From contig NIVC01000070.1 of NCBI GenBank assembly GCA_002269645.1, positions 930,001-994,000 on the forward strand: DNA of 64,000 nt, written 5' to 3'. The notes under the pieces were generated by a model that worked only from the letters and a program-made list of their open reading frames with translations, did no database searches and had not been told where the DNA came from. The position numbers and the translations under genes are program-made. The DNA comes from Macrostomum lignano (taxonomy: Eukaryota). Positions 10,201 to 63,344 of the stretch are shown piece by piece (the first letter of the stretch is position 1; the number at the start of each line of letters is the position of its first letter).

Positions 10201-13200
10201 CTGCAGGACACACGGCACTGCAGGACACACGGCACACACGGCACTGCAGGACACACGGCACACACGGCACTGCAGGACACACGGCACTGCAGGACACACG
10301 GCACTGCAGGACACACGGCACTGCAGGAGACACGGCACTGCAGGACACACGGCACTGCAGGACACACGACACTGCAGGACACAGGGCACTGCAGGTCACA
10401 TCGCACTGCAGGACACACGGCACTGCAGGACACACGGCACTGCAGGACACACGGCACTGCAGGACACACGGCACTGCAGGACACACGGCACTTCAGGACA
10501 CACGACACTGCAGGACACACGATACTGCAGGACACACGGCACTGCAGGACACACGGCACTGCAGGACACACGGCACACACGGCACTGCAGGACACACGGC
10601 ACACACGGCACTGCAGGACACACGGCACACACGGCACTGCAAGACACATGGCACACACGGCACTGCAGGACACACGGCACACACGGCACTGCAAGACACA
10701 TGGCACACACGGCACTGCAGGACACACGGCACTGCAGGACACACGGAACTGCAGGAGACACGGCACTGCAGGAGACACGGCACTGCAGGACACACGGCAC
10801 TGCAGGACACACGACACTGCAGGACACACGGCACTGCAGGACACACGGCACTGCAGGACACACGGCACTGCAGGACACACGGCACTTCAGGAGACACGGC
10901 ACTGCAGGACACACGACACTGCAGGACACACGGCACTTCAGGACACACGGCACTGCAGGACACACGGCACTTCAGGAGACACGGCACTGCAGGACACACG
11001 ACACTGCAGGACACACGACACTGCAGGACACACGGCACTGCAGGAGACACGGCACTGCAGGAAACTCGGCACACACGGCACTGCAGGACACACGGCACTG
11101 CAGGACACACGGCACTGCAGGACACACGGCACTGCAGGACACACGGCACTGCAGGACACACGGCACACACGGCACTGCAGGACACACGGCACACACGGCA
11201 CTGCAGGAGACACGGCACTGCAGGAGACATTGCAGTGCAGGACACACGGCACTGCAGGACACACGGCACTGCAGGACACACGGCACTGCAGGACACACGG
11301 CACTGCAGGACACACGGCACACACGGCACTGCAGGACACATGGCACACACGGCACTGCAGGACACACGGCACATACGGCACTGCAGGACACACGGCACTG
11401 CAGGACACACGGCACACACGGCACTGCAGGACACACGGCACTGCAGGACACACGGCACACACGGCACTGCAGGACACACGGCACTGCAGGACACACGGCA
11501 CTGCAGGACACACGGCACTGCAGGACACACGGCACACACGGCACTGCAGGACACACGGCACACACGGCACTGCAGGACACACGGCACACACGGCACTGCA
11601 GGACACATGGCACACACGGCACTGCAGGACACACGGCACACACGGCACTGCAGGACACACGGCACTGCAGGACACACGGCACACACGGCACTGCAGGACA
11701 CACGGCACTGCAGGACACACGGCACTGCAGGAGACACGGCACTGCAGGAGACACGGCACTGCAGGACACACGACACTGCAGGACACACGACACTGCAGGA
11801 CACACGGCACTGCAGGACACACGGCACACACGGCACTGCAGGACACACGGCACACACGGCACTGCAGGACACACGGCACACACGGCACTGCAGGACACAC
11901 GGCACTGCAGGACACACGGCACTGCAGGACACACGGCACACACGGCACTGCAGGACACACGGCACTGCAGGACACACGGCACTGCAGGACACACGGCACT
12001 GCAGGACACACGGCACTGCAGGACACACGGCACTGCAGGACACACGGCACTGCAGGACACACGGCACACACGGCACTGCAGGACATACGGCACACACGGC
12101 ACTGCAGGACACACGGCACACACGGCACTGCAGGACACACGGCACACACGGCACTGCAGGACACACGGCACACACGGCACTGCAGGACACACGGCACTGC
12201 AGGACACACGGCACACACGGCACTGCAGGACACACGGCACTGCAGGACACACGGCACTGCAGGACACACGGCACTGCAGGAGACACGGCACTGCAGGACA
12301 CACGGCACTGCAGGACACACGACACTGCAGGACACAGGGCACTGCAGGTCACATCGCACTGCAGGACACACGGCACTGCAGGACACACGGCACTGCAGGA
12401 CACACGGCACTGCAGGACACACGGCACTGCAGGACACACGGCACTTCAGGACACACGACACTGCAGGACACACGATACTGCAGGACACACGGCACTGCAG
12501 GACACACGGCACTGCAGGACACACGGCACACACGGCACTGCAGGACACACGGCACACACGGCACTGCAGGACACACGGCACACACGGCACTGCAAGACAC
12601 ATGGCACACACGGCACTGCAGGACACACGGCACACACGGCACTGCAAGACACATGGCACACACGGCACTGCAGGACACACGGCACTGCAGGACACACGGA
12701 ACTGCAGGAGACACGGCACTGCAGGAGACACGGCACTGCAGGACACACGGCACTGCAGGACACACGACACTGCAGGACACACGGCACTGCAGGACACACG
12801 GCACTGCAGGACACACGGCACTGCAGGACACACGGCACTTCAGGAGACACGGCACTGCAGGACACACGACACTGCAGGACACACGGCACTTCAGGACACA
12901 CGGCACTGCAGGACACACGGCACTTCAGGAGACACGGCACTGCAGGACACACGGCACTTCAGGAGACACGGCACTGCAGGACACACGACACTGCAGGACA
13001 CACGATACTGCAGGACACACGGCACTGCAGGACACACGGCACTGCAGGACACACGGCACACACGGCACTGCAGGACACACGGCACACACGGCACTGCAGG
13101 ACACACGGCACACACGGCACTGCAAGACACATGGCACACACGGCACTGCAGGACACACGGCACACACGGCACTGCAAGACACATGGCACACACGGCACTG

Positions 13201-16200
13201 CAGGACACACGGCACTGCAGGACACACGGAACTGCAGGAGACACGGCACTGCAGGAGACACGGCACTGCAGGACACACGGCACTGCAGGACACACGACAC
13301 TGCAGGACACACGGCACTGCAGGACACACGGCACTGCAGGACACACGGCACTGCAGGACACACGGCACTTCAGGAGACACGGCACTGCAGGACACACGAC
13401 ACTGCAGGACACACGGCACTTCAGGACACACGGCACTGCAGGACACACGGCACTTCAGGAGACACGGCACTGCAGGACACACGGCACTTCAGGAGACACG
13501 GCACTGCAGGACACACGACACTGCAGGACACACGACACTGCAGGACACACGGCACTGCAGGAGACACGGCACTGCAGGACACACGGCACTGCAGGACACA
13601 CGACACTGCAGGACACACGGCACATACGGCACTGCAGGACACACGGCACTGCAGGACACACGGCACACACGGCACTGCAGGACACACGGCACTGCAGGAC
13701 ACACGGCACTGCAGGACACACGGCACACACGGCACTGCAGGACACACGGCACACACGGCACTGCAGGACACACGGCACACACGGCACTGCAGGACACACG
13801 GCACACACGGCACTGCAGGACACACGGCACACACGGCACTGCAGGACACACGGCACTGCAGGACACACGGCACACACGGCACTGCAGGACACACGGCACT
13901 GCAGGACACACGGCACTGCAGGACACACGGCACACACGGCACTGCAGGACACACGGCACACACGGCACTGCAGGACACACGGCACTGCAGGACACACGGC
14001 ACTGCAGGACACACGGCACACACGGCACTGCAGGACACACGGCACACACGGCACTGCAGGACACACGGCACTGCAGGACACACGGCACACACGGCACTGC
14101 AGGACACACGGCACTGCAGGACACACGGCACTGCAGGACACACGGCACTGCAGGAGACACGGCACTGCAGGACACACGGCACTGCAGGACACACGACACT
14201 GCAGGACACAGGGCACTGCAGGTCACATCGCACTGCAGGACACACGGCACTGCAGGACACACGGCACTGCAGGACACACGGCACTGCAGGACACACGGCA
14301 CTGCAGGACACACGGCACTTCAGGACACACGACACTGCAGGACACACGATACTGCAGGACACACGGCACTGCAGGACACACGGCACTGCAGGACACACGG
14401 CACACACGGCACTGCAGGACACACGGCACACACGGCACTGCAGGACACACGGCACACACGGCACTGCAAGACACATGGCACACACGGCACTGCAGGACAC
14501 ACGGCACACACGGCACTGCAAGACACATGGCACACACGGCACTGCAGGACACACGGCACTGCAGGACACACGGAACTGCAGGAGACACGGCACTGCAGGA
14601 GACACGGCACTGCAGGACACACGGCACTGCAGGACACACGACACTGCAGGACACACGGCACTGCAGGACACACGGCACTGCAGGACACACGGCACTGCAG
14701 GACACACGGCACTTCAGGAGACACGGCACTGCAGGACACACGACACTGCAGGACACACGGCACTTCAGGACACACGGCACTGCAGGACACACGGCACTTC
14801 AGGAGACACGGCACTGCAGGACACACGACACTGCAGGACACACGACACTGCAGGACACACGGCACTGCAGGAGACACGGCACTGCAGGACACACGGCACA
14901 CACGGCACTGCAGGACACACGGCACTGCAGGACACACGGCACTGCAGGACACACGGCACTGCAGGACACACGGCACACACGGCACTGCAGGACACACGGC
15001 ACACACGGCACTGCAGGAGACACGGCACTGCAGGAGACATTGCAGTGCAGGACACACGGCACTGCAGGACACACGGCACTGCAGGACACACGGCACTGCA
15101 GGACACACGGCACTGCAGGACACACGGCACACACGGCACTGCAGGACACATGGCACACACGGCACTGCAGGACACACGGCACATACGGCACTGCAGGACA
15201 CACGGCACTGCAGGACACACGGCACACACGGCACTGCAGGACACACGGCACTGCAGGACACACGGCACACACGGCACTGCAGGACACACGGCACTGCAGG
15301 ACACACGGCACTGCAGGACACACGGCACTGCAGGACACACGGCACTGCAGGACACACGGCACTGCAGGACACACGGCACACACGGCACTGCAGGACACAC
15401 GGCACACACGGCACTGCAGGACACACGGCACACACGGCACTGCAGGACACATGGCACACACGGCACTGCAGGACACACGGCACACACGGCACTGCAGGAC
15501 ACACGGCACTGCAGGACACACGGCACACACGGCACTGCAGGACACACGGCACTGCAGGACACACGGCACTGCAGGAGACACGGCACTGCAGGAGACACGG
15601 CACTGCAGGACACACGACACTGCAGGACACACGACACTGCAGGACACACGGCACTGCAGGAAACACGGCACACACGGCACTGCAGGACACACGGCACACA
15701 CGGCACTGCAGGACACACGGCACACACGGCACTGCAGGACACACGGCACTGCAGGACACACGGCACTGCAGGACACACGGCACACACGGCACTGCAGGAC
15801 ACACGGCACTGCAGGACACACGGCACTGCAGGACACACGGCACTGCAGGACACACGGCACTGCAGGACACACGGCACTGCAGGACACACGGCACTGCAGG
15901 ACACACGGCACTGCAGGACACACGGCACACACGGCACTGCAGGACATACGGCACACACGGCACTGCAGGACACACGGCACACACGGCACTGCAGGACATA
16001 CGGCACACACGGCACTGCAGGACACACGGCACACACGGCACTGCAGGACACACGGCACTGCAGGACACACGGCACACACGGCACTGCAGGACACACGGCA
16101 CTGCAGGACACACGGCACTGCAGGACACACGGCACTGCAGGAGACACGGCACTGCAGGACACACGGCACTGCAGGACACACGACACTGCAGGACACAGGG

Positions 16201-19200
16201 CACTGCAGGTCACATCGCACTGCAGGACACACGGCACTGCAGGACACACGGCACTGCAGGACACACGGCACTGCAGGACACACGGCACTGCAGGACACAC
16301 GGCACTTCAGGACACACGACACTGCAGGACACACGATACTGCAGGACACACGGCACTGCAGGACACACGGCACTGCAGGACACACGGCACACACGGCACT
16401 GCAGGACACACGGCACACACGGCACTGCAGGACACACGGCACACACGGCACTGCAAGACACATGGCACACACGGCACTGCAGGACACACGGCACACACGG
16501 CACTGCAAGACACATGGCACACACGGCACTGCAGGACACACGGCACTGCAGGACACACGGAACTGCAGGAGACACGGCACTGCAGGAGACACGGCACTGC
16601 AGGACACACGGCACTGCAGGACACACGACACTGCAGGACACACGGCACTGCAGGACACACGGCACTGCAGGACACACGGCACTGCAGGACACACGGCACT
16701 GCAGGACACACGGCACTTCAGGAGACACGGCACTGCAGGACACACGACACTGCAGGACACACGGCACTTCAGGACACACGGCACTGCAGGACACACGGCA
16801 CTTCAGGAGACACGGCACTGCAGGACACACGACACTGCAGGACACACGACACTGCAGGACACACGGCACATACGGCACTGCAGGACACACGGCACTGCAG
16901 GACACACGGCACACACGGCACTGCAGGACACACGGCACTGCAGGACACACGGCACTGCAGGACACACGGCACACACGGCACTGCAGGACACACGGCACAC
17001 ACGGCACTGCAGGACACACGGCACACACGGCACTGCAGGACACACGGCACACACGGCACTGCAGGACACACGGCACACACGGCACTGCAGGACACACGGC
17101 ACACACGGCACTGCAGGACACACGGCACTGCAGGACACACGGCACTGCAGGACACACGGCACTGCAGGACACACGGCACTGCAGGACACACGGCACTGCA
17201 GGACACACGGCACTGCAGGACACACGGCACTGCAGGACACACGGCACACACGGCACTGCAGGACATACGGCACACACGGCACTGCAGGACACACGGCACA
17301 CACGGCACTGCAGGACACACGGCACACACGGCACTACAGGACACACGGCACACACGGCACTGCAGGACACACGGCACTGCAGGACACACGGCACACACGG
17401 CACTGCAGGACACACGGCACTGCAGGACACACGGCACTGCAGGACACACGGCACTGCAGGACACACGGCACTGCAGGACACACGGCACTGCAGGACACAC
17501 GGCACTGCAGGAGACACGGCACTGCAGGACACAGGGCACTGCAGGACACACGGCACTGCAGGACACACGGCACTGCAGGACACACGGCACTGCAGGACAC
17601 ACGGCACTGCAGGACACACGGCACTGCAGGAGACACGGCACTGCAGGAGACATCGCAGTGCAGGACACACGGCACTGCAGGACACACGGCACTGCTGGAC
17701 ACACGGCACTGCAGGACACACGGCACTGCAGGACACACGGCACACACGGCACTGCAGGACACATGGCACACACGGCACTGCAGGACACACGGCACATACG
17801 GCACTGCAGGACACACGGCACTGCAGGACACACGGCACACACGGCACTGCAGGACACACGGCACTGCAGGACACACGGCACACACGGCACTGCAGGACAC
17901 ACGGCACTGCAGGACACACGGCACTGCAGGACACACGGCACTGCAGGACACACGGCACACACGGCACTGCAGGACACACGGCACACACGGCACTGCAGGA
18001 CACACGGCACACACGGCACTGCAGGACACATGGCACACACGGCACTGCAGGACACACGGCACACACGGCACTGCAGGACACACGGCACTGCAGGACACAC
18101 GGCACACACGGCACTGCAGGACACACGGCACTGCAGGACACACGGCACTGCAGGAGACACGGCACTGCAGGAGACACGGCACTGCAGGACACACGACACT
18201 GCAGGACACACGACACTGCAGGACACACGGCACTGCAGGACACACGGCACACACGGCACTGCAGGACACACGGCACACACGGCACTGCAGGACACACGGC
18301 ACACACGGCACTGCAGGACACACGGCACTGCAGAACACACGGCACTGCAGGACACACGGCACACACGGCACTGCAGGACACACGGCACTGCAGGACACAC
18401 GGCACTGCAGGACACACGGCACTGCAGGACACACGGCACTGCAGGACACACGGCACTGCAGGACACACGGCACTGCAGGACACACGGCACTGCAGGACAC
18501 ACGGCACTGCAGGACACACGGCACTGCAGGACACACGGCACACACGGCACTGCAGGACATACGGCACACACGGCACTGCAGGACACACGGCACACACGGC
18601 ACTGCAGGACACACGGCACACACGGCACTGCAGGACACACGGCACACACGGCACTGCAGGACACACGGTACTGCAGGACACACGGCACACACGGCACTGC
18701 AGGACACACGGCACTGCAGGACACACGGCACTGCAGGACACACGGCACTGCAGGAGACACGGCACTGCAGGACACACGGCACTGCAGGACACACGACACT
18801 GCAGGACACAGGGCACTGCAGGACACATCGCACTGCAGGACACACGGCACTGCAGGACACACGGCACTGCAGGACACACGGCACTGCAGGACACACGGCA
18901 CTTCAGGACACACGACACTGCAGGACACACGATACTGCAGGACACACGGCACTGCAGGACACACGGCACTGCAGGACACACGGCACACACGGCACTGCAG
19001 GACACACGGCACACACGGCACTGCAGGACACACGGCACACACGGCACTGCAAGACACATGGCACACACGGCACTGCAGGACACACGGCACACACGGCACT
19101 GCAAGACACATGGCACACACGGCACTGCAGGACACACGGCACTGCAGGACACACGGCACTGCAGGAGACACGGCACTGCAGGAGACACGGCACTGCAGGA

Positions 19201-20662
19201 CACACGGCACTGCAGGACACACGACACTGCAGGACACACGGCACTGCAGGACACACGGCACTGCAGGACACACGGCACTGCAGGACACACGGCACTTCAG
19301 GAGACACGGCACTGCAGGACACACGACACTGCAGGACACACGGCACTTCAGGACACACGGCACTGCAGGACACACGGCACTTCAGGAGACACGGCACTGC
19401 AGGACACACGACACTGCAGGACACACGACACTGCAGGACACACGGCACTGCAGGAGACACGGCACTGCAGGACACACGGCACACACGGCACTGCAGGACA
19501 CACGGCACTGCAGGACACACGGAACACACGGCACTGCAGGACACACGGCACACACGGCACTGCAGGACACACGGCACACACGGCACTGCAGGACACACGG
19601 CACACACGGCACTGCAGGACACACGGCACTGCAGGACACACGGCACTGCAGGACACACGGCACTGCAGGACACACGGCACTGCAGGACACACGGCACTGC
19701 AGGACACACGGCACTGCAGGACACACGGCACACACGGCACTGCAGGACATACGGCACACACGGCACTGCAGGACACACGGCACACACGGCACTGCAGGAC
19801 ACACGGCACACACGGCACTGCAGGACACACGGCACACACGGCACTGCAGGACACACGGCACTGCAGGACACACGGCACACACGGCACTGCAGGACACACG
19901 GCACTGCAGGACACACGGCACTGCAGGACACACGGCACTGCAGGACACACGGCACTGCAGGACACACGGCACTGCAGGACACACGGCACTGCAGGACACA
20001 CGGCACTGCAGGACACACGGCACTGCAGGACACACGGCACTGCAGGACACACGGCACTGCAGGACACACGACACTGCAGGACACAGGGCACTGCAGGACA
20101 CACGGCACTTCAGGACACACGACACTGCAGGACACACGACACTGCAGGACACACGGCACTGCAGGACACACGGCACTGCAGGACACACGGCACACACGGC
20201 ACTGCAGGACACACGGCACTGCAGGACACACGGCACACACGGCACTGCAGGACACACGGCACACACGGCACTGCAGGACACACGGCACACACGGCACTGC
20301 AGGACACATGGCACTCACGGCACTGCAGGACACACGGCACACACGGCACTGCAGGACACACGGCACACACGGCACTGCAGGACACACGGCACTGCAGGAC
20401 ACACGGCACTGCAGGAGACACGGCACTGCAGGACACACGGCACTGCAGGACACACGACACTGCAGGACACACGGCACTGCAGGACACACGGCACTGCAGG
20501 ACACACGGCACTGCAGGACACACGGCACTTCAGGAGACACGGCACTGCAGGACACACGACACTGCAGGACACACGGCACTGCAGGACACACGGCACTGCA
20601 GGACACACGGCACTGCAGGAGACACGGCACTGCAGGACACACGGCACTGCAGGACACACGGC
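4280..20662 (+). repeat. 16.4-kb satellite array, 17-bp unit CACTGCAGGACACACGG (PstI site) plus 9-bp CACACACGG insertions; higher-order repeats of ~1.9-2.3 kb
   Basis: Direct tandem repetition; rare variants recur: CTGTAGG (TAG ending 5882 and 8161, period 2279) and CAGGTCACATCG (~10396, 12349, 14223, 16210). Confidence 0.98.
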
Positions 20663-20871
20663 AGTAAGGCTTGACAAATTAAAACAAAGCGAAAGAGTCT
20701 CAGGCTCATAATAGGTTGCCTCAGCATGTGCAAGGAATTGCAATCCAACAACGCCTTTACTGAAGTACGAAGTACTCGTATATTGTGTTGTAGGTAGGGG
20801 CGTGGGACAGGCTGGAGAATGATGTTAAGTCCAACAGGAAGCTGCAGGCAACAATGGGCCCTCGAAAATCT

Positions 20872-25272: not shown

Positions 25273-37309
<12,037 letters not shown>

Positions 37310-39047: not shown

Positions 39048-39394
39048 ACAAGGGAATCAAAGAGCTCTAGTTTATTTCGTATATTTACCAAGACAAATTG
39101 GAATAATTATTTTTATGCTTCGTAAATATAAATAATCAGCAAAATAGTTTTCAATAATACATGTATATTTTATTGAGCTTTAAATAATAGTAAAATATGG
39201 CAAAATTATAGCATAATAAATCAACTTCTGCAGAAAATATTGCGTGATAAACAGACACACAAAAATTGTCACTAATAATCAACGTTTGGTAAAATAACTG
39301 CAATAAATCCAAATGGAATAAAAGTATTGATTAGTTGTTAGTGTAAAATTTATTTGTTATAGTGCGAAAATTCATTCAGGATCCACTCACATCT

Positions 39395-40075
39395 AACAAT
39401 GAGCAATTTCCATCTGTCTATGACCAACTCACATCTGTCAATGACCAACTCACTTCTGTCAATGACCAACTTATATCTGTCAATGACCAGCTCAGATCTG
39501 TCAATGACCAACTCAAATTTATCAATGACCAACTCACATCTGTCTATGACTAACCTATATTTGTCTATGACCAACTTATATCTGTCTATGACCAACTCAC
39601 ATTTATCAATGACCAACTTATATCTGTCTATGACCAACTTATATCTGTCTATGACCAACTTATATCTGTCTATGACCAAGCTCAGATCTGTCAATGACCA
39701 ACTCAGATCTGTCAATGACCAGCTCAGATCTGTCAATGACCAACTCAGATCTATCAATGACCAAATTACATCTATCAATAACCAACTCCAACTCGTATTT
39801 ATCAATGACCAACTCAGATTTATCAATGACCAAATCACATCTATCAATGACCAAATCACATCTATCAATGACCAACTTACATCTATCAGTGACAAAATCA
39901 CATCTATCAATGACCAAATCACATCTATCAATGACCAACTCCAACTCGCATTTATCAATCACCAACTCCAACTCGCATTTATCAATGACCAACTCCAACT
40001 CGCATTTATCAATGACCAACTCCAACTCGCATTTATCAATGACCAACTCCAACTCGCATTTATCAATGACCAACT
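39395..40075 (+). repeat. Minisatellite, 21-bp unit AATGACCAACTCACATCTATC (27-bp variants), downstream of the CRYM stop
   Basis: Direct tandem repetition; reverse complement of the 40620-40925 array. Confidence 0.93.
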
Positions 40076-40206
40076 GATGCCATCTTCAATGATAAATTAA
40101 CATTATACCATAGTCAACAGACCTATAAGCAACTCAATGAACTCATGAAAACAAATGAGCAATTAGCATCTACCAATAACCAATAGGCTGTCACCAATGA
40201 CCAGTT

Positions 40207-42150
40207 TCACTCCTTCATCCGGAGATCCCACACTAGCCGGGCAGTGGCGGCGTCCTCAATGCCCAGTCCAAGCGACTTGAAGACGGTGAGGCCGCCGCGG
40301 CTGGCCCGGGCCTCGCGGAACCGCTCGGGATGGGCGATGAGCTCGCCAAGCTCCGCGTGCACCGTCGCCTTGTTGACGATGACGTCGCCCGACTCACTGC
40401 TCGCCGACTCTCGACTGTCAGCGACGAGGAACGCCGCCGAGGTGACGGACTCGTCCAGCTCGCGCTGGTCCGGCCGGCAGGCGCCGACAGCGTTCACGTG
40501 ACACAGGCGGGGCAGCCAATCGGCGCGCAGCACTGGGTCACGTGACGAGGTCACCGTGCACACAATGTCTGCCTGGTCTACGGCAGCCTTGGCCGATTCG
40601 CAGTCCTCAACCTGACAGGAATTGATAAATATGAGTTGGTCATTGATAGATGCGAGTTGGTAATTGATAGATATGAGTTGGTCATTGATAGATATGAGTT
40701 GGTCATTGATAGATGAGAGTTGGTCATTGATAGATGAGAGTTGGTCATTGATAGATATGAGCTGGTCGTTGATAGATAAGAGTTGGTCATTGATAGATAA
40801 TATTTGGTCATTGATAGATATGAGTTGGTCATTGATAGATGCGAGTTGGACATTGATAGATAATATTTGGTCATTGATAGATATGAGTTGGTCATTGATA
40901 GATGCGAATTGGTCATTGATCGATAGGGGTTGCTCATTGATGGATGCGCTTGTTAAATCTCTAACCCGTCCTTTCAGCTAGATTACCTTCATGACATCCG
41001 GCTTGAATTTGGCAGACAGCATAATCTTTTCTACCAGAGCAGCTCGCTTCTCGGGGTTCCGACTGTGCACCCGGATGCATTCAATGGCGAACAGAGTGGC
41101 TATGGCCTCGAAGTGGCTGAACGCTTGGGCGCCGGAGCCCAGCAAAGCCAGGGTTCGACTTTGCGGATGAGCAAGGTGCCTTCGAGATAAAGAGGTTGGG
41201 TCAGGATAAGCAAAGTAGAGTGACGTCATATTTTTAGGCTCGATTGAGAAATGTATATCAAACGGCAAGAGCAGATAGCGTGGCGGTACATCAAAGGACA
41301 TGGGCAGATAGCGTGGCGATACATCAAAGAACATGGACAGATAGGATGGCGGTACTCGTACAACAAAGTACATGGGCAGAAAAGGTGGCGGAACATCAAA
41401 GGACATTGGCAGATAGGGTGGCGGCACTTCAAAGGACATGTGTAGATAGGGTGGCGGTACATCAAAGGACATGTGTAGATAGGGTGGCGGCACTTCAAAG
41501 GACATGTGTAGATAGGGTGGCGGTACATCAAAGGACATGTGTAGATAGGGTGGCGGTACATCAAAGGACATGGGTAGATAGGGCGGCGGCACATCAAAGG
41601 ACAGAGACAGATAGGGTGACGGCACATCGAAATGACATGGGCAGATAGGGCTGGCGGTACATCAAAGGACATGGCAGATAGGATGGCGGCACATCAAAAG
41701 ACATGGGCAGATAGGGTGGGCGGCACATCAAAGGAACTGAGAGTAGGTCCCACTGCAGGCTAACCTGGATGCCACAGCACTGGCAGCAGCAGTTCTCATA
41801 CAGGTGATCTCCTCAGCGTCCATCAGAGCTTGCAGGCTGCCACTCTCGGGGTCAAACAAGGTCACAATGCCTTGGTGACTGGGCAGGTCAGTGTTTCCAG
41901 GAAACACAGTGACCAGCTTGCAGGCGAGGGCGGAGTCGGGCGCGCTGTAGCAGGGCATGGTGAGCAGCAAGCCGGTGCTGCCGGAGTCCACTTTAGTGCG
42001 CATAGGCTGACAAAACTCGGACTTCTTAGTCGAGTAGGTGATGAGGGATCGTTCCACGGTGGGGATCAGATCCTCATAGGAGAGCAATCCTTTAATTTCT
42101 TGGCCCGAGATGAATGGGGGTGTACCGTGTTGTTGTTGAGTTGTTGCCAT
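40207..42150 (-). CDS. CRYM: Mu-crystallin / ketimine reductase (ornithine cyclodeaminase family), 327 aa; exons 42150-41765, 41179-40987, 40611-40207
   Basis: Motifs CKLVTVFP, ITCMRTAAASAVAS, LALLGSGAQA (Rossmann GxGxxA), ADIVCTVTSS, HVNAVGA…RELD, FKSLGLGIEDAATA; splice phases 2 and 0 consistent (984 nt). Confidence 0.93.
40620..40925 (+). repeat. CRYM intron 2 minisatellite, 21-bp unit GATAGATATGAGTTGGTCATT
   Basis: Direct tandem repetition; ends ~9 nt from the exon-3 acceptor. Confidence 0.93.
41262..41735 (+). repeat. CRYM intron 1 minisatellite, ~33-bp unit GTAGATAGGGTGGCGGTACATCAAAGGACATGT
   Basis: Direct tandem repetition. Confidence 0.92.
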
Positions 42151-42320
42151 GGTAACTGTAATTTTTTTCTGAATTTCTATACTGACTGCCAATGTTAATG
42201 AATCAAGTGCAGGTTCACTCACATAACTTAAATTACTTAGGTACATCAATAATAGACTATGGTATTATTTTGGACAATAAAGTGACGCATTTAGCAAAGA
42301 ATGATGCACCTGATGTGCAG

Positions 42321-42775
42321 ATGTGCCACCTCAGCGAATCATAAAAGTCCATAGCCCTTTCATGTGCCACCTCAGCGAATCATAAAAGTCCATAGCCCTT
42401 TCATGTGCCACCTCAGCGAATCATAAAAGTCCATAGCCCTTTCATGTGCCACCTCAGCGAATCATAAAAGTCCATAGCCCTTTCATGTGCCACCTCAGCG
42501 AATCATAAAAGTCCATAGCCCTTTCATGTGCCACCTCAGCGAATCATAAAAGTCCATAGCCCTTTTGACGTGCCGCCTTGGCAAATCATAAACCTTTGAT
42601 GTGCCGCCTTGGAAAATTATAACCCTTTGATGTGCCGCCTTGGCAAACTCATAACCCTTTGATGTGCCGCCTTGGCAAACTCATAACCCTTTGATGTGCC
42701 GCCTTGGCAAACTCATAACCCTTTGATGTGCCGCCTTGGCAAACTCATAACCCTTTGATGTGCCGCCTTAGCAAA
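42321..42775 (+). repeat. Compound array between the two CRYM first exons: 41-bp unit (~6 copies) then a related 32-bp unit
   Basis: Period 41 (42321/42362/42403) and 32 (42629/42661/42693); shared ATGTGCC…CATA…CCCTTT core. Confidence 0.92.
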
Positions 42776-42839
42776 CGCTGATCTTTTGATGCAGAGCAAA
42801 CGTCTAGCAAGTGGCTGGAAATGCCAAGCAAAAATCTAC

Positions 42840-43204
42840 CTGGATGCCACAGCACTGGCAGCAGCAGTTCGCATACAGGTGATCTCCTCAGCGTCCATCA
42901 GAGCTTGCAGACTGCCATTGTTGGGGTCAAACAAGGTCACAATGCCTTGGTGACTGGGCAGGTCATGGTTTCCAGGAAACACAGTGACCAGCTTGCAGGC
43001 GAGAGCAGCATCAGGCGCATTGTAGCAGGGCATGGTGGCCAAAATGCCATTGTTGCTAGTGAAAACTTTTTCTCTGAGTGGCTGGTAGAATTGGGACTTC
43101 CAGTTTGAATAAGTGACTAAAGAGCGTTCCACAACTGTGATAAGGTCCTCATAGGTTAGGAAAGCTTTAATTTCAGGACCAGTAATAAATACAGGGTTGC
43201 TCAT
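42840..43204 (-). CDS. CRYM: Second, intact copy of the CRYM first coding exon (MSNPVFITGPEIK…CMRTAAASAVASR); putative alternative first exon
   Basis: Open frame from ATG 43204; ends TCCAG|gtagat at the same codon position and phase (2) as the downstream copy; no own exons 2-3 exist between it and the shared exon 2. Confidence 0.8.
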
Positions 43205-44672
43205 TGTGCTAGAAACATAGTTTGGTTTAATAAATATTTAGCGATGGTCACGAAACGCATAGAAAATATTAGGAAATTCGAAAATATTATTAAAATGATC
43301 ATAGTGTAAACAACAAAACCTAAAATACAATTCTTGAAACTCTAATCTCAAATCTGCCTTATCTTTTCATCTTTTTCATGCATGATAAATTATGATAATG
43401 CATTATAAAAGTAAATGTTGGAGCAATTTGTATATAATAATATAATCTATTTTAGCATTGTTCATCCTAATATCAATATTCAATAACTGACTGACTGAAA
43501 ATTATTACATAGTTTAATGTCATGATTCAATACTTTTATGGCCAATAAAATCATATTTTTTGTGTGTTTCTTATACATTTAAGTATTTTATCCGATGGTT
43601 TAACGATTGAATAATTGAATGGCTAAATGGCCAAATGATTCACAGTTTTCACTTTACTTTTTACATCACCTTTGTCCCTTGCAAAGTTTGAATCTGTTTG
43701 ATTGAACTCAAACTAACATTTTTGTGATTTCAAAAGGTAGTAAGACATAAGGCATAAGGCATTTGCTTAAGACAATGATGTTCTACTTTTTTGCGTTCTC
43801 GTGCAAAATGGATTTGGCTGTAGAAAGTGATCGACAGGTATTTTTAACAGCATAAACTAATTGAAATCTTAAGCCGTTAAGGTAGCATATACTGTGGAAA
43901 CAAAATGCAATTACAGAAAACTGTCTGTCTGTATTTTTCTTCTAAGAAAAGGTAGTTCAGTCATTGACCAAAGGGTCAAAGCTGTCACTTCGTAACTAAC
44001 AACGATAATAATGGTGGAAATATATATATATTTATTAGAAATTTAGAATATTAAAATTTCAAGAGCGATAATTCTAGATCTTTTTTAAGCGGGTGAAAAA
44101 ATAAAACAGGAAAAACATAAGTTTATTTTTAAAAATGAATAGAGCTGTTTAACTAACTTATTAAATATTTAATATAAAAATTTTTCATCCTTAACAAATG
44201 AGCTACAATATACAGCATTTAAATTTGTTTCAAATAGTTTTTAGAGTCTCGTGCTACTTTTAATTCAGCAATTGAGTGTTATTTTTGCCTCTCTTGCAAA
44301 CTGCTCTATAAGAAGGAACAATAATAAATCACTTAAAGATACGCATATAGAGCTGCATCTCTATTTTTGTAGATTAGGAAACATGCACCATTGCAGCTAT
44401 GAATTGTAAACTCTAAGTCGAAAATCGCAACACTTCAAATTCACACAGAATTATAATTGTAAGTTAAGGGCCTATCAATCATATTAATTTTGACCAGTGT
44501 AGTAGGACAGTGGTTTTTTCACAATCAAGATCCGTAATTGTGCTTTTGCTATTGTAATCAGTGCTTGTTCAATTGTTCTAGAAATTTGTATAGGCCTAGG
44601 TAGGCATAGGGAGTAACAACTGAATGATTCCATGAAATTAAGCCTATTTAATGCCAATTGCCAATGAATTCG

Positions 44673-59000: not shown

Positions 59001-61505
59001 AGCAGACAGATGCACAGCATTTTCAATCGGACGCACTCTTTAAAAGCGGAACCGTTGGTCAGGTGCTTTCTTAGAAATTCAAATAGCGGAGTCAGTCGAT
59101 AGGGACTCAGTGTGCAGTCGTTCCACAGGTAAGCCAGGGCCTCCACCCAATAGGTGAGCGAGCTCTCGCTGACTGTGGCCACCGCAGCCTCGAGTAACTG
59201 AAGAACCCATTGCCACATCTGCTGGTAGTCCTTGAGGCCCCACGACTTGGAGCCGCGTAATAGGCCACCAACTACGGCTGAGCGGCGGGTTGGTGAAGGG
59301 TTGGATCGGTGAGTCGCGTCATTTAAGTTGCATATTTCATATATATGCATGCAATTTATATTTCATTTTCAGCATCAATTATAATCTGTAAACATGGAGT
59401 CTGCAGAATTCTGCAAATTCTGTAGGCTAGAGGCCCAACAGTGAAAAGGTAGGGATGAGATGCTGCTGCTAGATCTCAAATGACCCATATGACTAACCTT
59501 AAATGACCCATATGACTGACCTCAAATGACCCATATGACTGACCTCAAATGACCCATATGACTGACCTCAAATGACCCATATGACTGACCTCAGATGACC
59601 CATATGACTGACCTCAAATGACCCATATGACTGATCTCAAATGACTCATATGACTGACCTCAAATGACCCATATGACTGACCTCAAATGACCCATATGAC
59701 TGACCTCAAATGACCCATACGACTGATCTCAAATGACCCATACGACTGACCTCAAATGACCCATATAACTAACCTCAAATGACCCATACGACTGACCTCA
59801 AATGACCCATATAACTAACCTCAAATGACCCATATGACTAACCTCAAATGACCCATATAACTAACCTCAAATGACCCATATAACTGACCTTAAATGACCC
59901 ATATGACTGACCCCGAATGACCCATACGACTGACCTCAAATGACCCAGATGACTGACCTCAGATGACCCAGATGACTGACCTCAAATGACCCAGATGACT
60001 GACCTCAAATGACCCAGATGACTGACCTCAGATGACTCAGATGACTGACCTCAAATGACCCAGATGACAAATGCGATCCCCCTAACCAGACCACAGCTTA
60101 CCAGCAGCAGATTTATGAATGACGTCTTCCTTATCGTGCCCACTGCAGCCTTCCAGCAGCTGTCGCATGGAGTCGATAAAGCATTCCCCGCTCTTCGCGT
60201 CAGTGAAGACATTCGGACCGTAGATTTTCGCCAGCAGGGAGACCATGTTCTCAGTGGGGAATTTGTCCATATCCTCCAGATCGTCCAGCCCGTCCATGGT
60301 GTCGCTTTGCTTGTCCTTCTCGTACAGCGAGGTCATGCAGCTGGTGAGCAGGAACTGCCAGGTGTCCCCGGCGGTGAAGAACTGTCTAACCAGCTGGCCG
60401 CACTCGTCCAGCTGCCGGTCAGCCGGCAGGTAATCGGCCGGATCGCGGATTCGAACCACCGGCGGCCAATAGGTGAATCCCATTGTCTCTTTGTCAACGC
60501 GGGGAAATTTCTCCCAAGTGGCCTGATCCGAGTAGGCGTCTCGTTGGCTGGAGAACACCAGGAAGTCGTTGTCTGGCCGGGGCCCGGGCACGCGGCATTC
60601 GGCCAGGTTGGCCGGGTGCGGCGTCAGGCAGATCCGCCTGGCAACAAAGCGCTTGCTGTACATCACGGCATCGAGTAGGTGGCAGGCGTTCGACCTGATA
60701 GAGGGCACCGAGCTCTTCATGTGGTGCAGGATGAAGCGGACTGTGCTGACCTGCGCGATGGGAGGATTCGGTGGAGATTTTAATGCGCTGTCGATTCAGA
60801 TCAGCTCGATTAGGATGTCACCAGCGCACAAAGCCCCCCCTTCCCATGGGGGCATTTAAATTCATAATATTTGACCCAGCACTTTCAAAGCGATTTTTTA
60901 TCGCAAGGTTTTCTGTATTTGGCAGTTTTGTATTTTTTGATACATATCGGCTTTATTTCTCCGCCAGACGGTTCTCGAAAAAATCAGATGCACAGACAGA
61001 GACAAACAGCGCAAAATTAAAACATAGATCTGATTTCAACTCACGGGAATGGGCACATCGTACTGCCCGGGCATCAGGTCCATGATGAGGCGAACGATCT
61101 GCCAGCTGGACTCGTTCCTGCCGGCCGCATCCAGCAGCCAGTCCGTGCTGCTGTGGAACAGTTTCCATCGGTTTGAGAAATCTTCGGCCAGCAGCGACTC
61201 GGCAGAGAGGCGCTCCGACTCCGTGGGCGCCGCTTTGGCGCCCTGCTCGGCCAGAAGGCGCTCGGCGAGGCTGCGCAGGGCGTCCGGGGTTGCTGGCCGA
61301 GCGATGTTGAGCGTGTTGAGCGACTCCAGCACGCACAGCTCCAGCTCGTCCACCTGGCATTTTGGAGCACATTGTTGTAATGGGGATTCAGAGGCAATAG
61401 GAGAGGCAATCGGATACTGTGCGCTGCAGACAGACAGACAGGCAGACACAGACAGACAGACAGACAGATAGACAGACATACATACAGACAGACAGACAGA
61501 CAGAC

Positions 61506-61574
<69 letters not shown>

Positions 61575-61581
61575 GGCAGAC

Positions 61582-61616
<35 letters not shown>

Positions 61617-61623
61617 GGCAGAC

Positions 61624-61674
<51 letters not shown>

Positions 61675-61769
61675 GGCAGACAGACAGACATGCAGACAGA
61701 CAGATAGACAGACATACAGACAGACAGACATGCATACAGACAGAGTCACAGAGAGACAGACAAACAGAC

Positions 61770-61816
<47 letters not shown>

Positions 61817-63344
61817 GCCCCATGAGTTAAACCTTCTTATCCACGTTGCCCTCCAGCAGGAAGGGGCTGAGCTTGGCCTGCACCAGGGCCTGGCCAACCA
61901 GAGGCACAACGCTGTAGACGGTGCTACCGAAATCCGGGTAGAACTCTCGCAGCACCTCCAGCAGGCCTTCAAATTCGTGTCGTTTCATGTCGCCGCCGCC
62001 GGCTTCCAACTGTTGGCAGGCTTTAGGCAGAAATAGCTGAGGCGACTGCCTGAAGCGGTAGAAGAACTCCAGCAGGTAGTTCCGGGCTACAGATCTCACT
62101 CGCTCGTACGGCGACTGCACGGCGGTTCGGTAGAGCAGCCAGCCGATCTCCAGGGCCGACGAGTCCATGCGGCGCGAATTGGACATGAGGCGGGTGCAGT
62201 GGCAGACGCAGACGCGGAGGAAATGATAAACGGGCAGATGATACTCTTTGCCCAGCAGGGAGTTGCGGCAGAATATCACGATATTGTTGATCCATTTGGT
62301 GAGCACCTGGGCGCGGGTTGCGATTGGGGAGGTTTGTTTATTTTAAGATCGTGCCAGTCACTCCAAAATGTCACTCTTTAGAAAGTGACTCTTTAAAATT
62401 GTCACTCTTTAGAAAGTGACTCTTTGAAATGTCACTCTTGAGAAAGTGACTCTTTGAAATTGTCACTCTTTAGAAAGTGACTCTTTTGAAATTGTCACTC
62501 CTTAGAAAGTGACTCTTTTGAAATTGTCACTCTTTAGAAAGTGACTCTTTGAAATTGTCACTCTTTGGAAAGTGACTCTTTGAAATGTCACTCTTGAGAA
62601 AGTGACTCTTTGAAATTGTCACTCTTGAGAAAGTGACTCTTTGAAATGTCACTCTTGAGAAAGTGACTCTTTGAAATGTCACTCCTTAGAAAGTGACTAT
62701 TTTGAAATGTCACTCTTGAGAAAGTGACTCTTTGAAATTGTCACTCTTTAGAAAGTGACTCTTGAAATTGTCACTCTTTAGAAAGTGACTCTTGAAATTG
62801 TCACTCCTTAGAAAGAGACTCTTTGAATTGTCACTATTTAGAAAGTGACTCTTTGAAATTTCAAACTTTAGGGAGTGACTCTTTGAAATTGTCACTCTAT
62901 ATGGGAGTGACCATTTGAAATGTCACTCTTTAGGGGGTGACTCTTTGGAATGTAACTTGCTATGCATAAATTGGTACTTATTGAGTCACTGTTTAAGTCA
63001 ACTATTTAAGACTTTTTAGGAGTAAGGAGTGAAAAAATTATGATTAATAAACTGCTCACTTTCTTAATAGCCGAATAATCCAGAAAGGGGAACAGCAGCG
63101 AATTGAACAGCAGAATGAGCTCCTCAAGCGACTGCGTGTCGTCTTCGCACTTCTCAGTGAGATGTTGAAACAGTCTGATTGCCAGCTTGCGCAACTCGCA
63201 GCGCAAATTCTTGCCGGACCAGGTGATCTCGAAGCTGTCTAAGCGGTAGACAAATTTGGACACTTCAGTCGGGGCGCTGATCTCGGCCACTGGTAGCAGC
63301 GGCACCAGCTCGTCCTGCCACATGGGGGTCACGTGCTCCACGCC
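56029..63344 (-). CDS. PSME4: Proteasome activator complex subunit 4 (PA200/Blm10), 3' portion (~1150 aa); exons 63344-63060, 62306-61833, 61353-61045, 60750-60102, 59277-58839, 58369-57935, 57687-57314, 56516-56029; 5' exons lie beyond the window
   Basis: C-terminus RHSGVLGLCSIVESAPYDVP…LASFKRTHQETW…EQLLVLTDLLVSPNYYA* (HbYX motif); GGLLRGSKSW; TWEKFPRVDKETMGFTYWP; LQDDSLDVRKAASGTLSGLL; all phases consistent (3453 nt). Confidence 0.92.
56585..57278 (+). repeat. PSME4 last-intron minisatellite, 20-bp GAGGTGTCAGG-core units in a 60-bp higher-order arrangement
   Basis: Direct tandem repetition of three alternating variants. Confidence 0.93.
58490..58760 (+). repeat. PSME4 intron minisatellite, ~23-bp unit ACAGACAGATGACAGACACTGAA
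   Basis: Imperfect tandem repetition. Confidence 0.85.
59475..60068 (+). repeat. PSME4 intron minisatellite, 23-bp unit ATGACCCATATGACTGACCTCAA
   Basis: Period 23 (59521 to 59544). Confidence 0.95.
61428..61817 (+). repeat. (GACA)n microsatellite in PSME4 intron
   Basis: Direct tandem repetition. Confidence 0.95.
62362..62950 (+). repeat. PSME4 intron minisatellite, ~30-bp unit AAATTGTCACTCTTTAGAAAGTGACTCTTTG with internal inverted repeat
   Basis: Direct tandem repetition; GTCACT…AGTGAC in each unit. Confidence 0.93.

What the first reader, a model, noticed from the sequence alone, without database searches (positions are those of the whole stretch)
40207..43204. CRYM/ketimine reductase with two interchangeable N-terminal exons spliced to one shared NAD(P)H-binding half
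Seen: two intact copies of coding exon 1 (43204-42840 and 42150-41765) end at the same codon (…AVASR) with phase-2 GT donors, but exons 2-3 exist only once. Splicing copy B into copy A's upstream AG (42156/42155) gives a frameshift with a TAA about 20 codons later, so the two must be mutually exclusive. Known: in the OCD/mu-crystallin family the N-terminal half carries dimerisation and substrate-binding residues (CKLV Lys, RTAA Arg), while the Rossmann domain is C-terminal. Inference: a modular two-isoform imine reductase whose substrate/dimer module is swapped by promoter or splice choice, possibly forming heterodimers.
Basis: partly seen in the sequence, partly recalled or inferred. Interest (0 to 1): 0.75.

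Follow-up and report, generated by a model that had tools for sequence, protein, structure and literature searches.

The report
Flatworm CRYM with duplicated first exon
The ketimine-reductase (CRYM) gene of the flatworm Macrostomum lignano has two old, intact copies of its first coding exon ahead of one set of later exons, much like the variable first exons of UGT1A, but no accessible data show that the upstream copy is ever spliced into an mRNA.

Summary
The window is Macrostomum lignano (Mlig_3_7, NIVC01000070.1). On the minus strand there is a CRYM/ketimine-reductase gene with two homologous first coding exons: A at 43204-42840 and B at 42150-41765. Each has its own ATG and a phase-2 GT donor, and exons 2 and 3 occur once.

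New findings:
- **Mosaic exons.** The 5' 200 nt are 64% identical with saturated synonymous sites. The 3' 165 nt are 96% identical.
- **Gene conversion.** A second genomic copy shows A and B changing together.
- **Constraint on exon A.** Its replacement-site rate equals that of exon B and of a related species' transcript. It keeps every family-invariant residue and gives a confident model when joined to exons 2-3.
- **Exon B is a true first exon.** It has no pyrimidine tract before its upstream AG.
- **Intron complementarity.** Minisatellites in the two introns flanking exon B are complementary and could loop it out.

The RNA-seq-guided public annotation supports only the exon-B start. I could reach no transcript joining A to exon 2. 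Substrate-pocket residues are the same in A and B, apart from one Ile/Leu change, so "swapped substrate module" overstates the case.

Best reading: UGT1A/protocadherin-style alternative first exons. This is a new member of a known kind, of moderate interest.

The parts
42840..43204 (-). Exon A: upstream copy of coding exon 1 (ATG 43204, 365 nt, phase-2 donor CAG|GTAGAT). Encodes residues 1-121 plus 2 nt of isoA.
   Evidence: Unannotated in Mlig_3_7. Present in fused UniProt models P0122 and P0001.
43003..43204 (-). A-specific diverged 5' part of exon A. It is 64% identical to exon B over 201 aligned nt. Synonymous sites are saturated (pS 0.76), pN is 0.24, and GC3 is 0.46.
42840..43002 (-). 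Gene-converted 3' part of exon A. It is 96% identical to 41765-41927 of exon B (pS 0.05) and carries the CKLV Lys and RTAA Arg.
   Evidence: Co-variation of A and B in a second genomic copy.
42321..42776 (-). Intron A minisatellites: a 32-mer x7 at 42555-42776 and a 41-mer x6.6 at 42321-42592. In the RNA they carry 12 copies of GGCGGCACAUCAAAGG or GGUGGCACAUGAAAGG.
42151..42320 (-). Unique A/T-rich stretch just upstream of exon B, probably its 5' UTR or promoter. It contains the in-frame ATG (42246) used as start by the public model PAA91884.1, a TATAGAAA motif, and TTACAG|TTACC (AG 42157/42156). That AG has a purine-rich upstream tract.
   Evidence: The trans-splice acceptor motif YTNCAG comes from PMC8629364.
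41765..42150 (-). Exon B: downstream copy of coding exon 1 (ATG 42150 in ACCATGG, 386 nt, phase-2 donor CAG|GTTAGC). Its N-terminus resembles that of the related-species transcript.
41253..41735 (-). Intron B minisatellite (33-mer x14.4). In the RNA it carries 12 copies of CCUUUGAUGURCCGCC, complementary to the intron A arrays.
40987..41179 (-). Shared exon 2. It completes the Arg codon and encodes HLAHPQSRTLALLGSGAQA..., the start of the Rossmann fold. Acceptor AG is at 41181/41180 and the donor is AAG|GTAATC.
40621..40945 (-). Intron 2 minisatellite (21-mer x15.5). It is an inverted copy of the arrays downstream of the gene.
40207..40611 (-). Shared exon 3, running to the TGA stop at 40209-40207.
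39385..40075 (-). Arrays downstream of the stop codon (21/42/63-mer and 27-mer). They are 78-88% complementary to the intron 2 array over 150-310 nt, so exon 3 is also bracketed by inverted arrays.

Best explanation
**What it is.** This is the single CRYM (ketimine reductase / mu-crystallin) gene of Macrostomum lignano. Its first coding exon was duplicated in tandem long ago, roughly as long ago as the split from the Macrostomum-like species behind SRR30276804, whose protein is 71% identical.

**What has happened since.** Both copies have stayed protein-coding. Their 5' ~200 nt diverged to synonymous saturation under purifying selection. Their 3' ~165 nt, which encode the catalytic Lys and Arg and the splice donor, are kept nearly identical by recurrent gene conversion in both directions.

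**Most likely mechanism (inferred, not shown).** The gene works as UGT1A, protocadherin and Drosophila hydra variable first exons do. Transcription starts either upstream of exon A or inside intron A, just upstream of exon B. Each first exon has a start codon and a 5' splice site but no usable 3' splice site. The cap-proximal donor is therefore joined to the one acceptor of exon 2.

**Products.** Two 320/327-aa enzymes result. They share residues from ~70 onward, including the substrate-pocket residues apart from one Ile/Leu position and the whole NAD(P)H domain. They differ at 26 of the first 67 aligned residues, at 3 further positions, and by a 7-residue N-terminal extension in B.

**A possible aid to splicing (inferred).** In transcripts started at A, the complementary minisatellite arrays in introns A and B could zip together. 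That would loop out exon B and its donor and bring the A donor next to the exon 2 acceptor.
For: **Anatomy and family**
- Exon structure and reading frames.
- Family assignment.
- Organism and locus.

**Old duplication plus constraint on A**
- In the 5' half, A versus B has pS 0.76 and pN 0.24 (Fisher 2e-10).
- dN(A,O) is 0.27 and dN(B,O) is 0.29, where O is the related-species transcript.
- Lineage-specific changes at codon positions 1+2 number 15 for A, 12 for B and 12 for O (A versus B, p=0.70).
- A's own changes are biased to third positions (p=0.008).
- Seventy-two random substitutions would leave the frame open only 11% of the time. They would give about 42 amino-acid changes, against 26 observed; 0 of 20,000 simulations reached 26 or fewer.
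- A keeps all family-invariant residues of its diverged part: L16, P42, R44, M58, P59.
- A's identity to ten other animal CRYMs is 33%, similar to B at 37% and O at 35%.
- IsoA gives a confident AlphaFold model, with mean pLDDT 93.9 and N-terminal blocks at 81-97.

**Gene conversion**
- The 3' half has pS 0.05 between A and B, against 0.61 to the ortholog.
- In a second genomic copy (P0001), A and B both carry L and I where both carry M and M in the window. B there has A's NN.

**Exon B as a first exon**
- The RNA-seq-guided model PAA91884.1 starts in intron A.
- The upstream AG lacks a pyrimidine tract.
- The related-species transcript has a B-like N-terminus and an unspliced 61-nt leader.

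**RNA zipper**
- There are 12+12 copies of a 16-nt core in opposite orientation on the two sides of exon B, against 0.08 expected.
- The minimum-free-energy fold of the pre-mRNA has 280 intron A-intron B pairs, running from 42804/41222 to 42355/41735.
- The cofold gain is -144.6 kcal/mol, against -26.9 when intron B is reverse-complemented.

**Precedent**
- UGT1A and hydra variable first exons (PMC9013439).
Against: - No transcript or protein record joins exon A to exon 2. The exact isoA sequence is absent from the 15-billion-protein collection.
- Exon A is not in the RNA-seq-guided Mlig_3_7 annotation.
- The two transcripts from the related species are B-like only.
- Exon A's diverged part has drifted to AT-rich codons, with GC3 0.46 against 0.68 for B and 0.77 for exons 2-3.
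- A has more third-position changes than B, 18 against 6 (p=0.02).
- Between the two M. lignano genomic copies, A's 5' part differs at 3 of 67 residues. B's 5' part plus the constant part differ at 1 of 272 (p=0.03). This hints at weaker recent constraint on A.
- The intact 3' half of A, including its donor, could be maintained by conversion from B alone.
- Inverted orientation of two related arrays has a prior of about one half. Related arrays are common in this window. The zipper could therefore be incidental.
- AlphaFold confidence is expected for any homologous sequence.
Confidence: 0.55

Rival explanations
1. Exon A is an unexpressed relic of a partial tandem duplication. Only exon B is used. 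A looks intact because its 3' half is continually overwritten by conversion from B and its 5' half has escaped a stop by luck.
For: - Only B-start models rest on RNA-seq.
- IsoA is absent from sequence collections.
- A has AT-shifted third positions.
- A's 5' half has 3 of 67 residue differences between genomic copies, against 1 of 272 elsewhere.
- An open frame would survive 72 random hits 11% of the time.
Against: - Synonymous sites between A and B are saturated while replacement sites are not (pS 0.76, pN 0.24; 2e-10).
- A's replacement-position changes equal those of the expressed B and O lineages (15, 12 and 12).
- A neutral A lineage of that age should show about 42 or more amino-acid changes and loss of the invariant residues. 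All are kept.
- The ATG and the GT donor are intact in two genomic copies.
Confidence: 0.2
2. There is one promoter and two kinds of splicing. All transcription starts upstream of exon A. IsoA arises by cis-splicing of A to exon 2. IsoB arises when the spliced leader is trans-spliced onto the AG at 42157/42156, and exon A is discarded as part of the outron.
For: - TTACAG|TTACC matches the M. lignano SL acceptor motif YTNCAG, and 30-39% of genes are trans-spliced (PMC8629364; PMC5730564).
- An acceptor with no productive cis partner is the textbook situation for trans-splicing.
Against: - The public CDS begins at 42246, upstream of that AG, so the assembled transcript reads through it unspliced.
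- The tract before the AG is purine-rich, with pyrimidine fraction 0.32.
- An upstream cis donor (A's) normally suppresses trans-splicing (statement in PMC8629364).
- The SL ends in ATG, which would be out of frame with B's ATG (sequence, frame read).
- The related species' transcript has a genomic leader, not an SL.
Confidence: 0.12
3. Exon A is expressed but not as part of a full enzyme. Read-through of its donor stops at once (AGG TAG). This would give a 122-aa stand-alone N-terminal domain, or an upstream ORF that regulates translation of exon B in a long intron-retaining leader.
For: - A TAG follows the Arg codon directly when the donor is not used.
- The public transcript model extends into intron A for an unknown distance.
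- Coding constraint on A says it is translated but does not say with what it is joined.
Against: - The same phase and an identical exon end and donor context are kept in A and B.
- The N-terminal domain of the OCD fold is completed by the C-terminal helix, which a 122-aa product would lack (my knowledge of OCD/CRYM structures; secondary structure).
- No canonical AATAAA lies in intron A (read).
Confidence: 0.08
4. The tandem arrangement is an assembly artefact that stacks two alleles or homeologous copies.
For: M. lignano is a hidden polyploid with a redundant assembly that is hard to resolve (PMC5730564).
Against: - The 5' halves differ at saturated synonymous sites, far beyond allelic or homeolog divergence, which is about 98% protein identity.
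- No separate gene with an A-type N-terminus exists among M. lignano proteins.
- A+B in tandem is seen in models from the ML2-based proteome, in two distinct copies.
Confidence: 0.02

Closest known systems
UGT1A, clustered protocadherin and Drosophila hydra variable first exons
   Same: Homologous first exons produced by tandem duplication lie upstream of one set of constant exons. Each has its own start codon and 5' splice site and no 3' splice site. The variable exon encodes the N-terminal domain and the constant exons encode the cofactor-binding or common part (PMC9013439).
   Different: There are only two variable exons. The family is an OCD/mu-crystallin imine reductase. The 3' 45% of the two exons is homogenised by gene conversion, so the substrate-contact residues do not vary, apart from one Ile/Leu position. 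Separate promoters and use of exon A are not demonstrated.
Mutually exclusive tandem-duplicated internal exons controlled by RNA pairing (Dscam, 14-3-3, srp, ATE1)
   Same: The exons are tandem-duplicated, similar in length and identical in phase. Including both would shift the frame. There is long-range complementarity between the flanking introns (PMC6071210; PMC7797038).
   Different: These are first exons, not internal ones. There is no docking site with competing selectors, only one long zipper made of minisatellite arrays on either side of exon B. That zipper would act by looping out, as described for inverted Alu pairs (PMC11263572).
Vertebrate CRYM / ketimine reductase (PDB 4bv8, 2i99)
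   Same: Both isoforms match Pfam OCD_Mu_crystall over the full length, and isoB aligns end to end with the CRYM structures (7e-64). The GSGAQA Rossmann motif is present, and the Arg/Lys/Arg substrate triad is conserved.
   Different: Identity is about 44%. Three pocket positions of mouse CRYM differ: F58 becomes Ile or Leu, F79 becomes Val, and V49 becomes Lys. Thyroid-hormone binding therefore cannot be assumed. I found no report of a duplicated first exon in CRYM of other animals.

Membership tests
OCD/mu-crystallin family (Pfam PF02423) | Full-length match to the family profile above the curated cut-off | tested here: met
   IsoA scores 219.9 bits and isoB 220.6 bits against a cut-off of 24, over profile positions 9/10-308 of 314.
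OCD/mu-crystallin family (Pfam PF02423) | Rossmann dinucleotide motif and the conserved Arg/Lys/Arg that hold the substrate carboxylate | tested here: met
   GSGAQA is in exon 2. R44, K71 and R112 (isoA numbering) are invariant columns in alignments A1 and A2, and both A and B keep them.
OCD/mu-crystallin family (Pfam PF02423) | NAD(P)H-dependent imine reductase or cyclodeaminase activity | not testable with these tools
   Needs recombinant protein and enzyme assays.
Animal CRYM / ketimine reductase orthologs | Closest relatives outside the genus are proteins annotated as animal ketimine reductase mu-crystallin | tested here: met
   The best non-Macrostomum hits include Aplysia, Mytilus, fish, Ptychodera and Lingula CRYM at 39-48% identity. 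Bacterial OCD-family proteins score almost as well.
Animal CRYM / ketimine reductase orthologs | T3-pocket residues of mouse CRYM (R47, V49, F58, K75, F79, R118; PMC9202446) | tested here: inconclusive
   R47, K75 and R118 are kept. V49 becomes Lys, F79 becomes Val, and F58 becomes Ile (A) or Leu (B), from the alignment and residue numbering counted by hand.
Tandem-duplicated alternative first exons (UGT1A / Pcdh type) | Homologous variable exons in tandem upstream of a single set of constant exons | tested here: met
Tandem-duplicated alternative first exons (UGT1A / Pcdh type) | Each variable exon has a start codon and a 5' splice site but no functional 3' splice site | tested here: met
   Sequence level only. 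Both have an ATG and CAG|GT. The AG before exon B has pyrimidine fraction 0.32, and its use gives a premature stop. Exon A is preceded by tttctAG|CACAATG (0.60), so an upstream non-coding exon or a spliced leader cannot be excluded.
Tandem-duplicated alternative first exons (UGT1A / Pcdh type) | Each variable exon has its own promoter or transcription start | not testable with these tools
   There is an indirect hint for B only: the RNA-seq-guided CDS begins within intron A.
Tandem-duplicated alternative first exons (UGT1A / Pcdh type) | Transcripts join each variable exon directly to the first constant exon | tested here: inconclusive
   B->exon 2 is in the RNA-seq-guided model PAA91884.1. 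For A->exon 2 there is no record, but no M. lignano read data were reachable.
Docking/selector-controlled mutually exclusive exons (Dscam type) | Internal exons with both splice sites, plus one docking site competed for by several selector sequences | tested here: not met
   Both are first exons. The complementarity is one array against one array flanking exon B.

The most novel reading that the evidence does not exclude
The complementary minisatellite arrays in introns A and B act as a splicing device. They have 12 copies each of a 16-nt core and about 280 predicted base pairs. In transcripts started at exon A they would zip the two introns together. That would hide exon B and its donor in a loop and place the A donor 35 nt, and the exon 2 acceptor 42 nt, from the base of the stem. 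Transcripts started at exon B lack the upstream arm and splice normally. On this reading, fast-evolving tandem repeats rather than a conserved docking site would enforce the choice between duplicated first exons. The same logic might apply to exon 3, which is also bracketed by inverted arrays.
Probability: 0.2. Interest if true: 0.6.

Novelty: new member of a known kind. Interest (0 to 1): 0.4.

Why it matters
If both first exons are used, this would be the first case I know of in which an OCD/mu-crystallin enzyme gains two N-terminal variants from one gene. It would also be a clean natural example of three things:
- a tandem exon duplicate kept for a very long time;
- gene conversion confined to the part that carries the catalytic residues, while the rest is free to diverge;
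- repeat-built intron complementarity that could steer splice choice.

M. lignano supports transgenesis and RNAi, so the model can be tested directly.

It also corrects public gene models. The 483- and 487-aa UniProt entries A0A1I8HNF4 and A0A1I8GHK4 fuse both exons and are almost certainly artefacts. The 32-residue N-terminal extension of PAA91884.1 is probably 5' UTR.

If exon A proves unused, the locus is an ordinary partial duplication.

Tried and rejected
- **Exact look-up of isoA and isoB** in the 15-billion-protein collection: neither is present, only annotation-derived models.
- **Homolog search with the exon A peptide alone:** only 7 candidates and 3 weak hits. It did not even recover P0001, so the negative result carries little weight.
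- **Look-up of the 122-aa read-through ORF of exon A:** not on record.
- **Literature searches** for Mlig023944 and for Macrostomum + mu-crystallin: nothing.
- **P0123,** a 49-aa member of the P0001 cluster, turned out to be an unrelated phage-like metagenome ORF, that is, a mis-clustering.
- **Rooting the A/B/O trichotomy** with other animal CRYMs: 1:1:1 informative sites, unresolved.
- **Rfam, tRNA and spliced-leader scans** of the window: nothing.
- **Retroposed origin of exon A:** rejected, because similarity stops exactly at the donor GT and does not run on into exon 2 sequence.
- **Intron arrays as part of the original duplication:** rejected, because they are inverted rather than direct, and no other flanking similarity survives.
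- **The fused 483/487-aa models as real proteins:** rejected, because they would carry two N-terminal half-domains in tandem, joined through minisatellite-derived peptide.
Full report
**1. What is in the sequence.**

I read 39800-43800 on the minus strand and assembled the pieces with a script.

- Exon A runs 43204-42840 (365 nt).
- Exon B runs 42150-41765 (386 nt).
- Each starts with an ATG and ends ...GCA TCC AG|GT. Both lengths are 2 mod 3.
- The single exon 2 (41179-40987) supplies the G that completes the Arg codon. It continues HLAHPQSRTLALLGSGAQA.
- Exon 3 (40611-40207) ends in TGA.

The two possible products are 320 aa (isoA) and 327 aa (isoB). Both match Pfam OCD_Mu_crystall over essentially the whole profile, at 5e-65 and 3e-65. 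IsoB, the isoform I searched, aligns end to end with the mouse and human CRYM structures 4bv8 and 2i99, at 7e-64 and 1e-60.

tblastn against the whole window finds exon 1 twice and exons 2 and 3 once, with nothing else CRYM-like. Joining A to the AG in front of B's ATG shifts the frame and stops after 21 codons.

**2. Organism and existing annotation.**

The closest database proteins are from Macrostomum lignano. The locus is NIVC01000070.1 of assembly Mlig_3_7.

Three public models cover it:
- **PAA91884.1 (359 aa).** This is exon B + exon 2 + exon 3. The ORF is extended to an upstream in-frame ATG at 42246, inside intron A.
- **A0A1I8GHK4 (487 aa) and A0A1I8HNF4 (483 aa).** These string exon A, a piece of intron A minisatellite and exon B together in one frame.

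The Mlig_3_7 annotation is RNA-seq-guided, using StringTie/TACO/TBONE (PMC5730564). Use of exon B as a 5' exon therefore has transcript support. Exon A is not part of any gene in that annotation.

The fused models would encode two N-terminal half-domains in tandem, and I regard them as prediction artefacts. They are still useful. A0A1I8GHK4 is identical to the window, and A0A1I8HNF4 comes from a second, 98% identical genomic copy. The A+B arrangement is therefore present in at least two copies of the locus and is not a mis-join.

The next annotated gene is a myotubularin/FYVE gene. It is transcribed divergently, with its CDS starting at 46556 on the plus strand. That leaves 3.35 kb of AT-rich unique sequence upstream of exon A.

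**3. The two exons are mosaics.**

Similarity between A and B is confined to the coding sequence. It stops exactly at the donor GT, and no flanking similarity survives.

| Part of exon 1 | Aligned length | Nucleotide identity | pS | pN |
|---|---|---|---|---|
| 5' part | 67 codons | 64% | 0.76 (saturated) | 0.24 |
| 3' part | 55 codons | 96% | 0.05 | 0.04 |

Against the related-species transcript, the same 3' part has pS 0.61.

The near-identity of the 3' part is therefore not selection on the protein. It is recent homogenisation. The second genomic copy shows this directly:
- Where the window has M and M in both A and B (LMDAEEITCMR), that copy has L and I in both A and B.
- Its exon B carries exon A's NN in place of ES.

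Conversion has acted after the genomic copies separated, and in both directions. The converted tract is about 43002-42840 in A and 41927-41765 in B. It contains the CKLV Lys, the RTAA Arg and the donor.

**4. Is exon A a living exon?**

No read data were reachable, so I used evolution. Two Logan transcript contigs from a related species give an outgroup I call O (SRR30276804 and SRR30276812; protein 71% identical, with a B-like N-terminus and a 61-nt genomic leader without spliced leader).

In the diverged 5' half:
- dN(A,O) is 0.27 and dN(B,O) is 0.29.
- Lineage-specific changes at codon positions 1+2 number 15 (A), 12 (B) and 12 (O). A versus B gives p=0.70.
- A's own changes are biased to third positions, 18 of 67 against 15 of 134 (p=0.008).
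- Rooting with other animals is unresolved. The duplication is therefore about as old as the split from O.

A sequence decaying neutrally over that span would behave differently. With the observed 72 substitutions placed at random, the frame stays open in 11% of trials. The mean number of amino-acid changes is 42, against 26 observed, and none of 20,000 trials reached 26 or fewer.

Further support:
- Exon A keeps every invariant or nearly invariant family residue in its diverged part: L16, P42, R44, M58 and P59.
- It is as similar to other animals' CRYM as B and O are, at 33%, 37% and 35%.
- Spliced to exons 2-3 it gives a confident AlphaFold model (mean pLDDT 93.9, pTM 0.93). This is weak evidence, because any homolog would do so.

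Caveats:
- A's third positions have shifted to A/T (GC3 0.46, against 0.68 in B and 0.77 in exons 2-3).
- Between the two M. lignano copies, A's 5' part has 3 of 67 residue differences. The rest of the protein outside the converted tract has 1 of 272 (p=0.03).
- Constraint on A may therefore be weaker at present.

My conclusion is that exon A has been translated for most of its history. Nothing else CRYM-like is nearby, so the only way it can make a complete OCD fold is by splicing to exon 2.

**5. How the choice is probably made.**

Exon B has no credible 3' splice site. The 25 nt before its AG are 32% pyrimidine, against 72% for exon 2 and 68% for exon 3. The public transcript model also reads through that AG. 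B therefore behaves as a first exon.

That is the UGT1A / protocadherin / hydra design (PMC9013439). Several homologous first exons each have a start codon and a donor, and the cap-proximal donor joins to the one constant acceptor. That rule is my knowledge of those systems.

The hexamer TTACAG in front of B does match the M. lignano trans-splice acceptor motif YTNCAG (PMC8629364). I therefore keep a one-promoter rival in which cis-splicing A->2 competes with SL trans-splicing onto B. The purine-rich tract, the read-through model and the out-of-frame ATG of the spliced leader speak against it.

**6. An unexpected feature: complementary intron arrays.**

Intron A holds two minisatellites, a 32-mer x7 and a 41-mer x6.6. 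Intron B holds one, a 33-mer x14. The three units differ but share a 16-nt core, CCTTTGATGTRCCGCC.

The core occurs 24 times in the window, against 0.08 expected. Twelve copies lie on one strand in intron A and twelve on the other strand in intron B. It occurs nowhere else in the window.

Folding the pre-mRNA from exon A's end to exon 2's start gives 280 intron A-intron B base pairs in about a dozen blocks. They run from 42804/41222 to 42355/41735:
- The outer end of the stem sits 35 nt from A's donor and 42 nt from exon 2's acceptor.
- The inner loop holds exon B with its leader and its donor.

The cofolding gain is -144.6 kcal/mol, against -26.9 when intron B is reverse-complemented. Transcripts that start at B would lack the upstream arm.

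This fits a looping-out aid to A->2 splicing, as seen for inverted Alu pairs and in RNA-pairing models of mutually exclusive exons (PMC11263572; PMC6071210). It may also be incidental:
- Tandem arrays cover 58.5% of this window.
- Related arrays in either orientation are common here.
- The prior for inverted orientation is one half.
- Exon 3 is likewise bracketed by inverted arrays.

**7. What the two isoforms would differ in.**

The exon-1 residues that line the T3/substrate pocket of mouse CRYM are R47, V49, F58, K75, F79 and R118 (Borel et al. as cited in PMC9202446). Mapped through the alignment, only the F58 position differs, as Ile in A and Leu in B.

The differences lie elsewhere:
- 26 of the first 67 aligned residues;
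- 3 further positions;
- a 7-residue extension in B.

These fall in the N-terminal strand, the two helices and the first strands of the N-terminal domain. A change in dimer contacts, stability or partners is possible, and so is no functional difference beyond separate expression control. A swap of substrate specificity is not indicated by the sequence.

**8. Verdict.**

- The architecture and the long-term coding constraint on both exons favour two alternative first exons.
- Use of exon A is inferred, not shown.
- The "substrate module" claim is overstated.

The kind of system is known (variable first exons from tandem exon duplication). The family in which it occurs, the half-exon gene conversion and the minisatellite zipper are the new details. 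I rate interest at 0.4.

Noticed in passing
window 4281-20663: A 16.4-kb satellite of about 996 copies of a 17-mer (ACACACGGCACTGCAGG). GC is 0.63 and AT skew about +0.67. It fills a quarter of the window.
   Followed up: no
whole window: Tandem arrays with periods of 4-60 nt cover 58.5% of the 64 kb, against about 15% for simple and tandem repeats genome-wide in M. lignano (PMC5730564). Most long 'ORFs' in the window are repeat artefacts.
   Followed up: partly
window 39370-40075 and 40621-40946: Exon 3 of the CRYM gene is bracketed by inverted copies of one 21-nt minisatellite family, 78-88% complementary over 150-310 nt. One lies in intron 2 and the other just downstream of the stop codon, possibly in the 3' UTR. 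I did not explore effects on splicing, dsRNA formation or DNA stability.
   Followed up: partly
window 41253-41735, 42321-42592, 42555-42776: Three minisatellites with different unit lengths (33, 41 and 32 nt) and different spacers share one 16-nt core, CCTTTGATGTRCCGCC. The core occurs nowhere else in the window. The origin of a shared core in otherwise unrelated units is unexplained; it could be a transposon subterminal repeat or a protein-binding site.
   Followed up: partly
window 42151-42246; UniProt A0A1I8GHK4 and A0A1I8HNF4; GenBank PAA91884.1: Public gene models for this locus look wrong. Two fuse exon A, minisatellite-derived peptide and exon B into 483/487-aa proteins. One adds 32 residues (MYLSNLSYVSEPALDSLTLAVSIEIQKKITVT) upstream of the conserved start, and the related species' protein lacks them.
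   Followed up: yes
window 46556 onward, + strand: A myotubularin-related/FYVE-domain gene is transcribed divergently from CRYM. The 3.35 kb between its start and exon A is unusually AT-rich unique sequence (GC about 0.30) and could hold a shared bidirectional promoter region.
   Followed up: no
window 43003-43204 versus 41928-42150: The diverged part of exon A has GC3 0.46, while exon B has 0.68 and exons 2-3 have 0.77. The related species has 0.84. This is a marked codon-composition shift within one gene.
   Followed up: partly
window 28735-30082 and 61427-61817: Long tetranucleotide microsatellites: (CTAT) about 340 copies and (CAGA) about 100 copies.
   Followed up: no
L004 (ENA ERZ15610157 NODE_31029): A 49-aa ORF from a phage-like metagenome contig (neighbours include SpoVS, Sipho_Gp157 and AAA_24) is filed in the same 90% cluster as the M. 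lignano CRYM model. This looks like a clustering error in the protein collection.
   Followed up: yes
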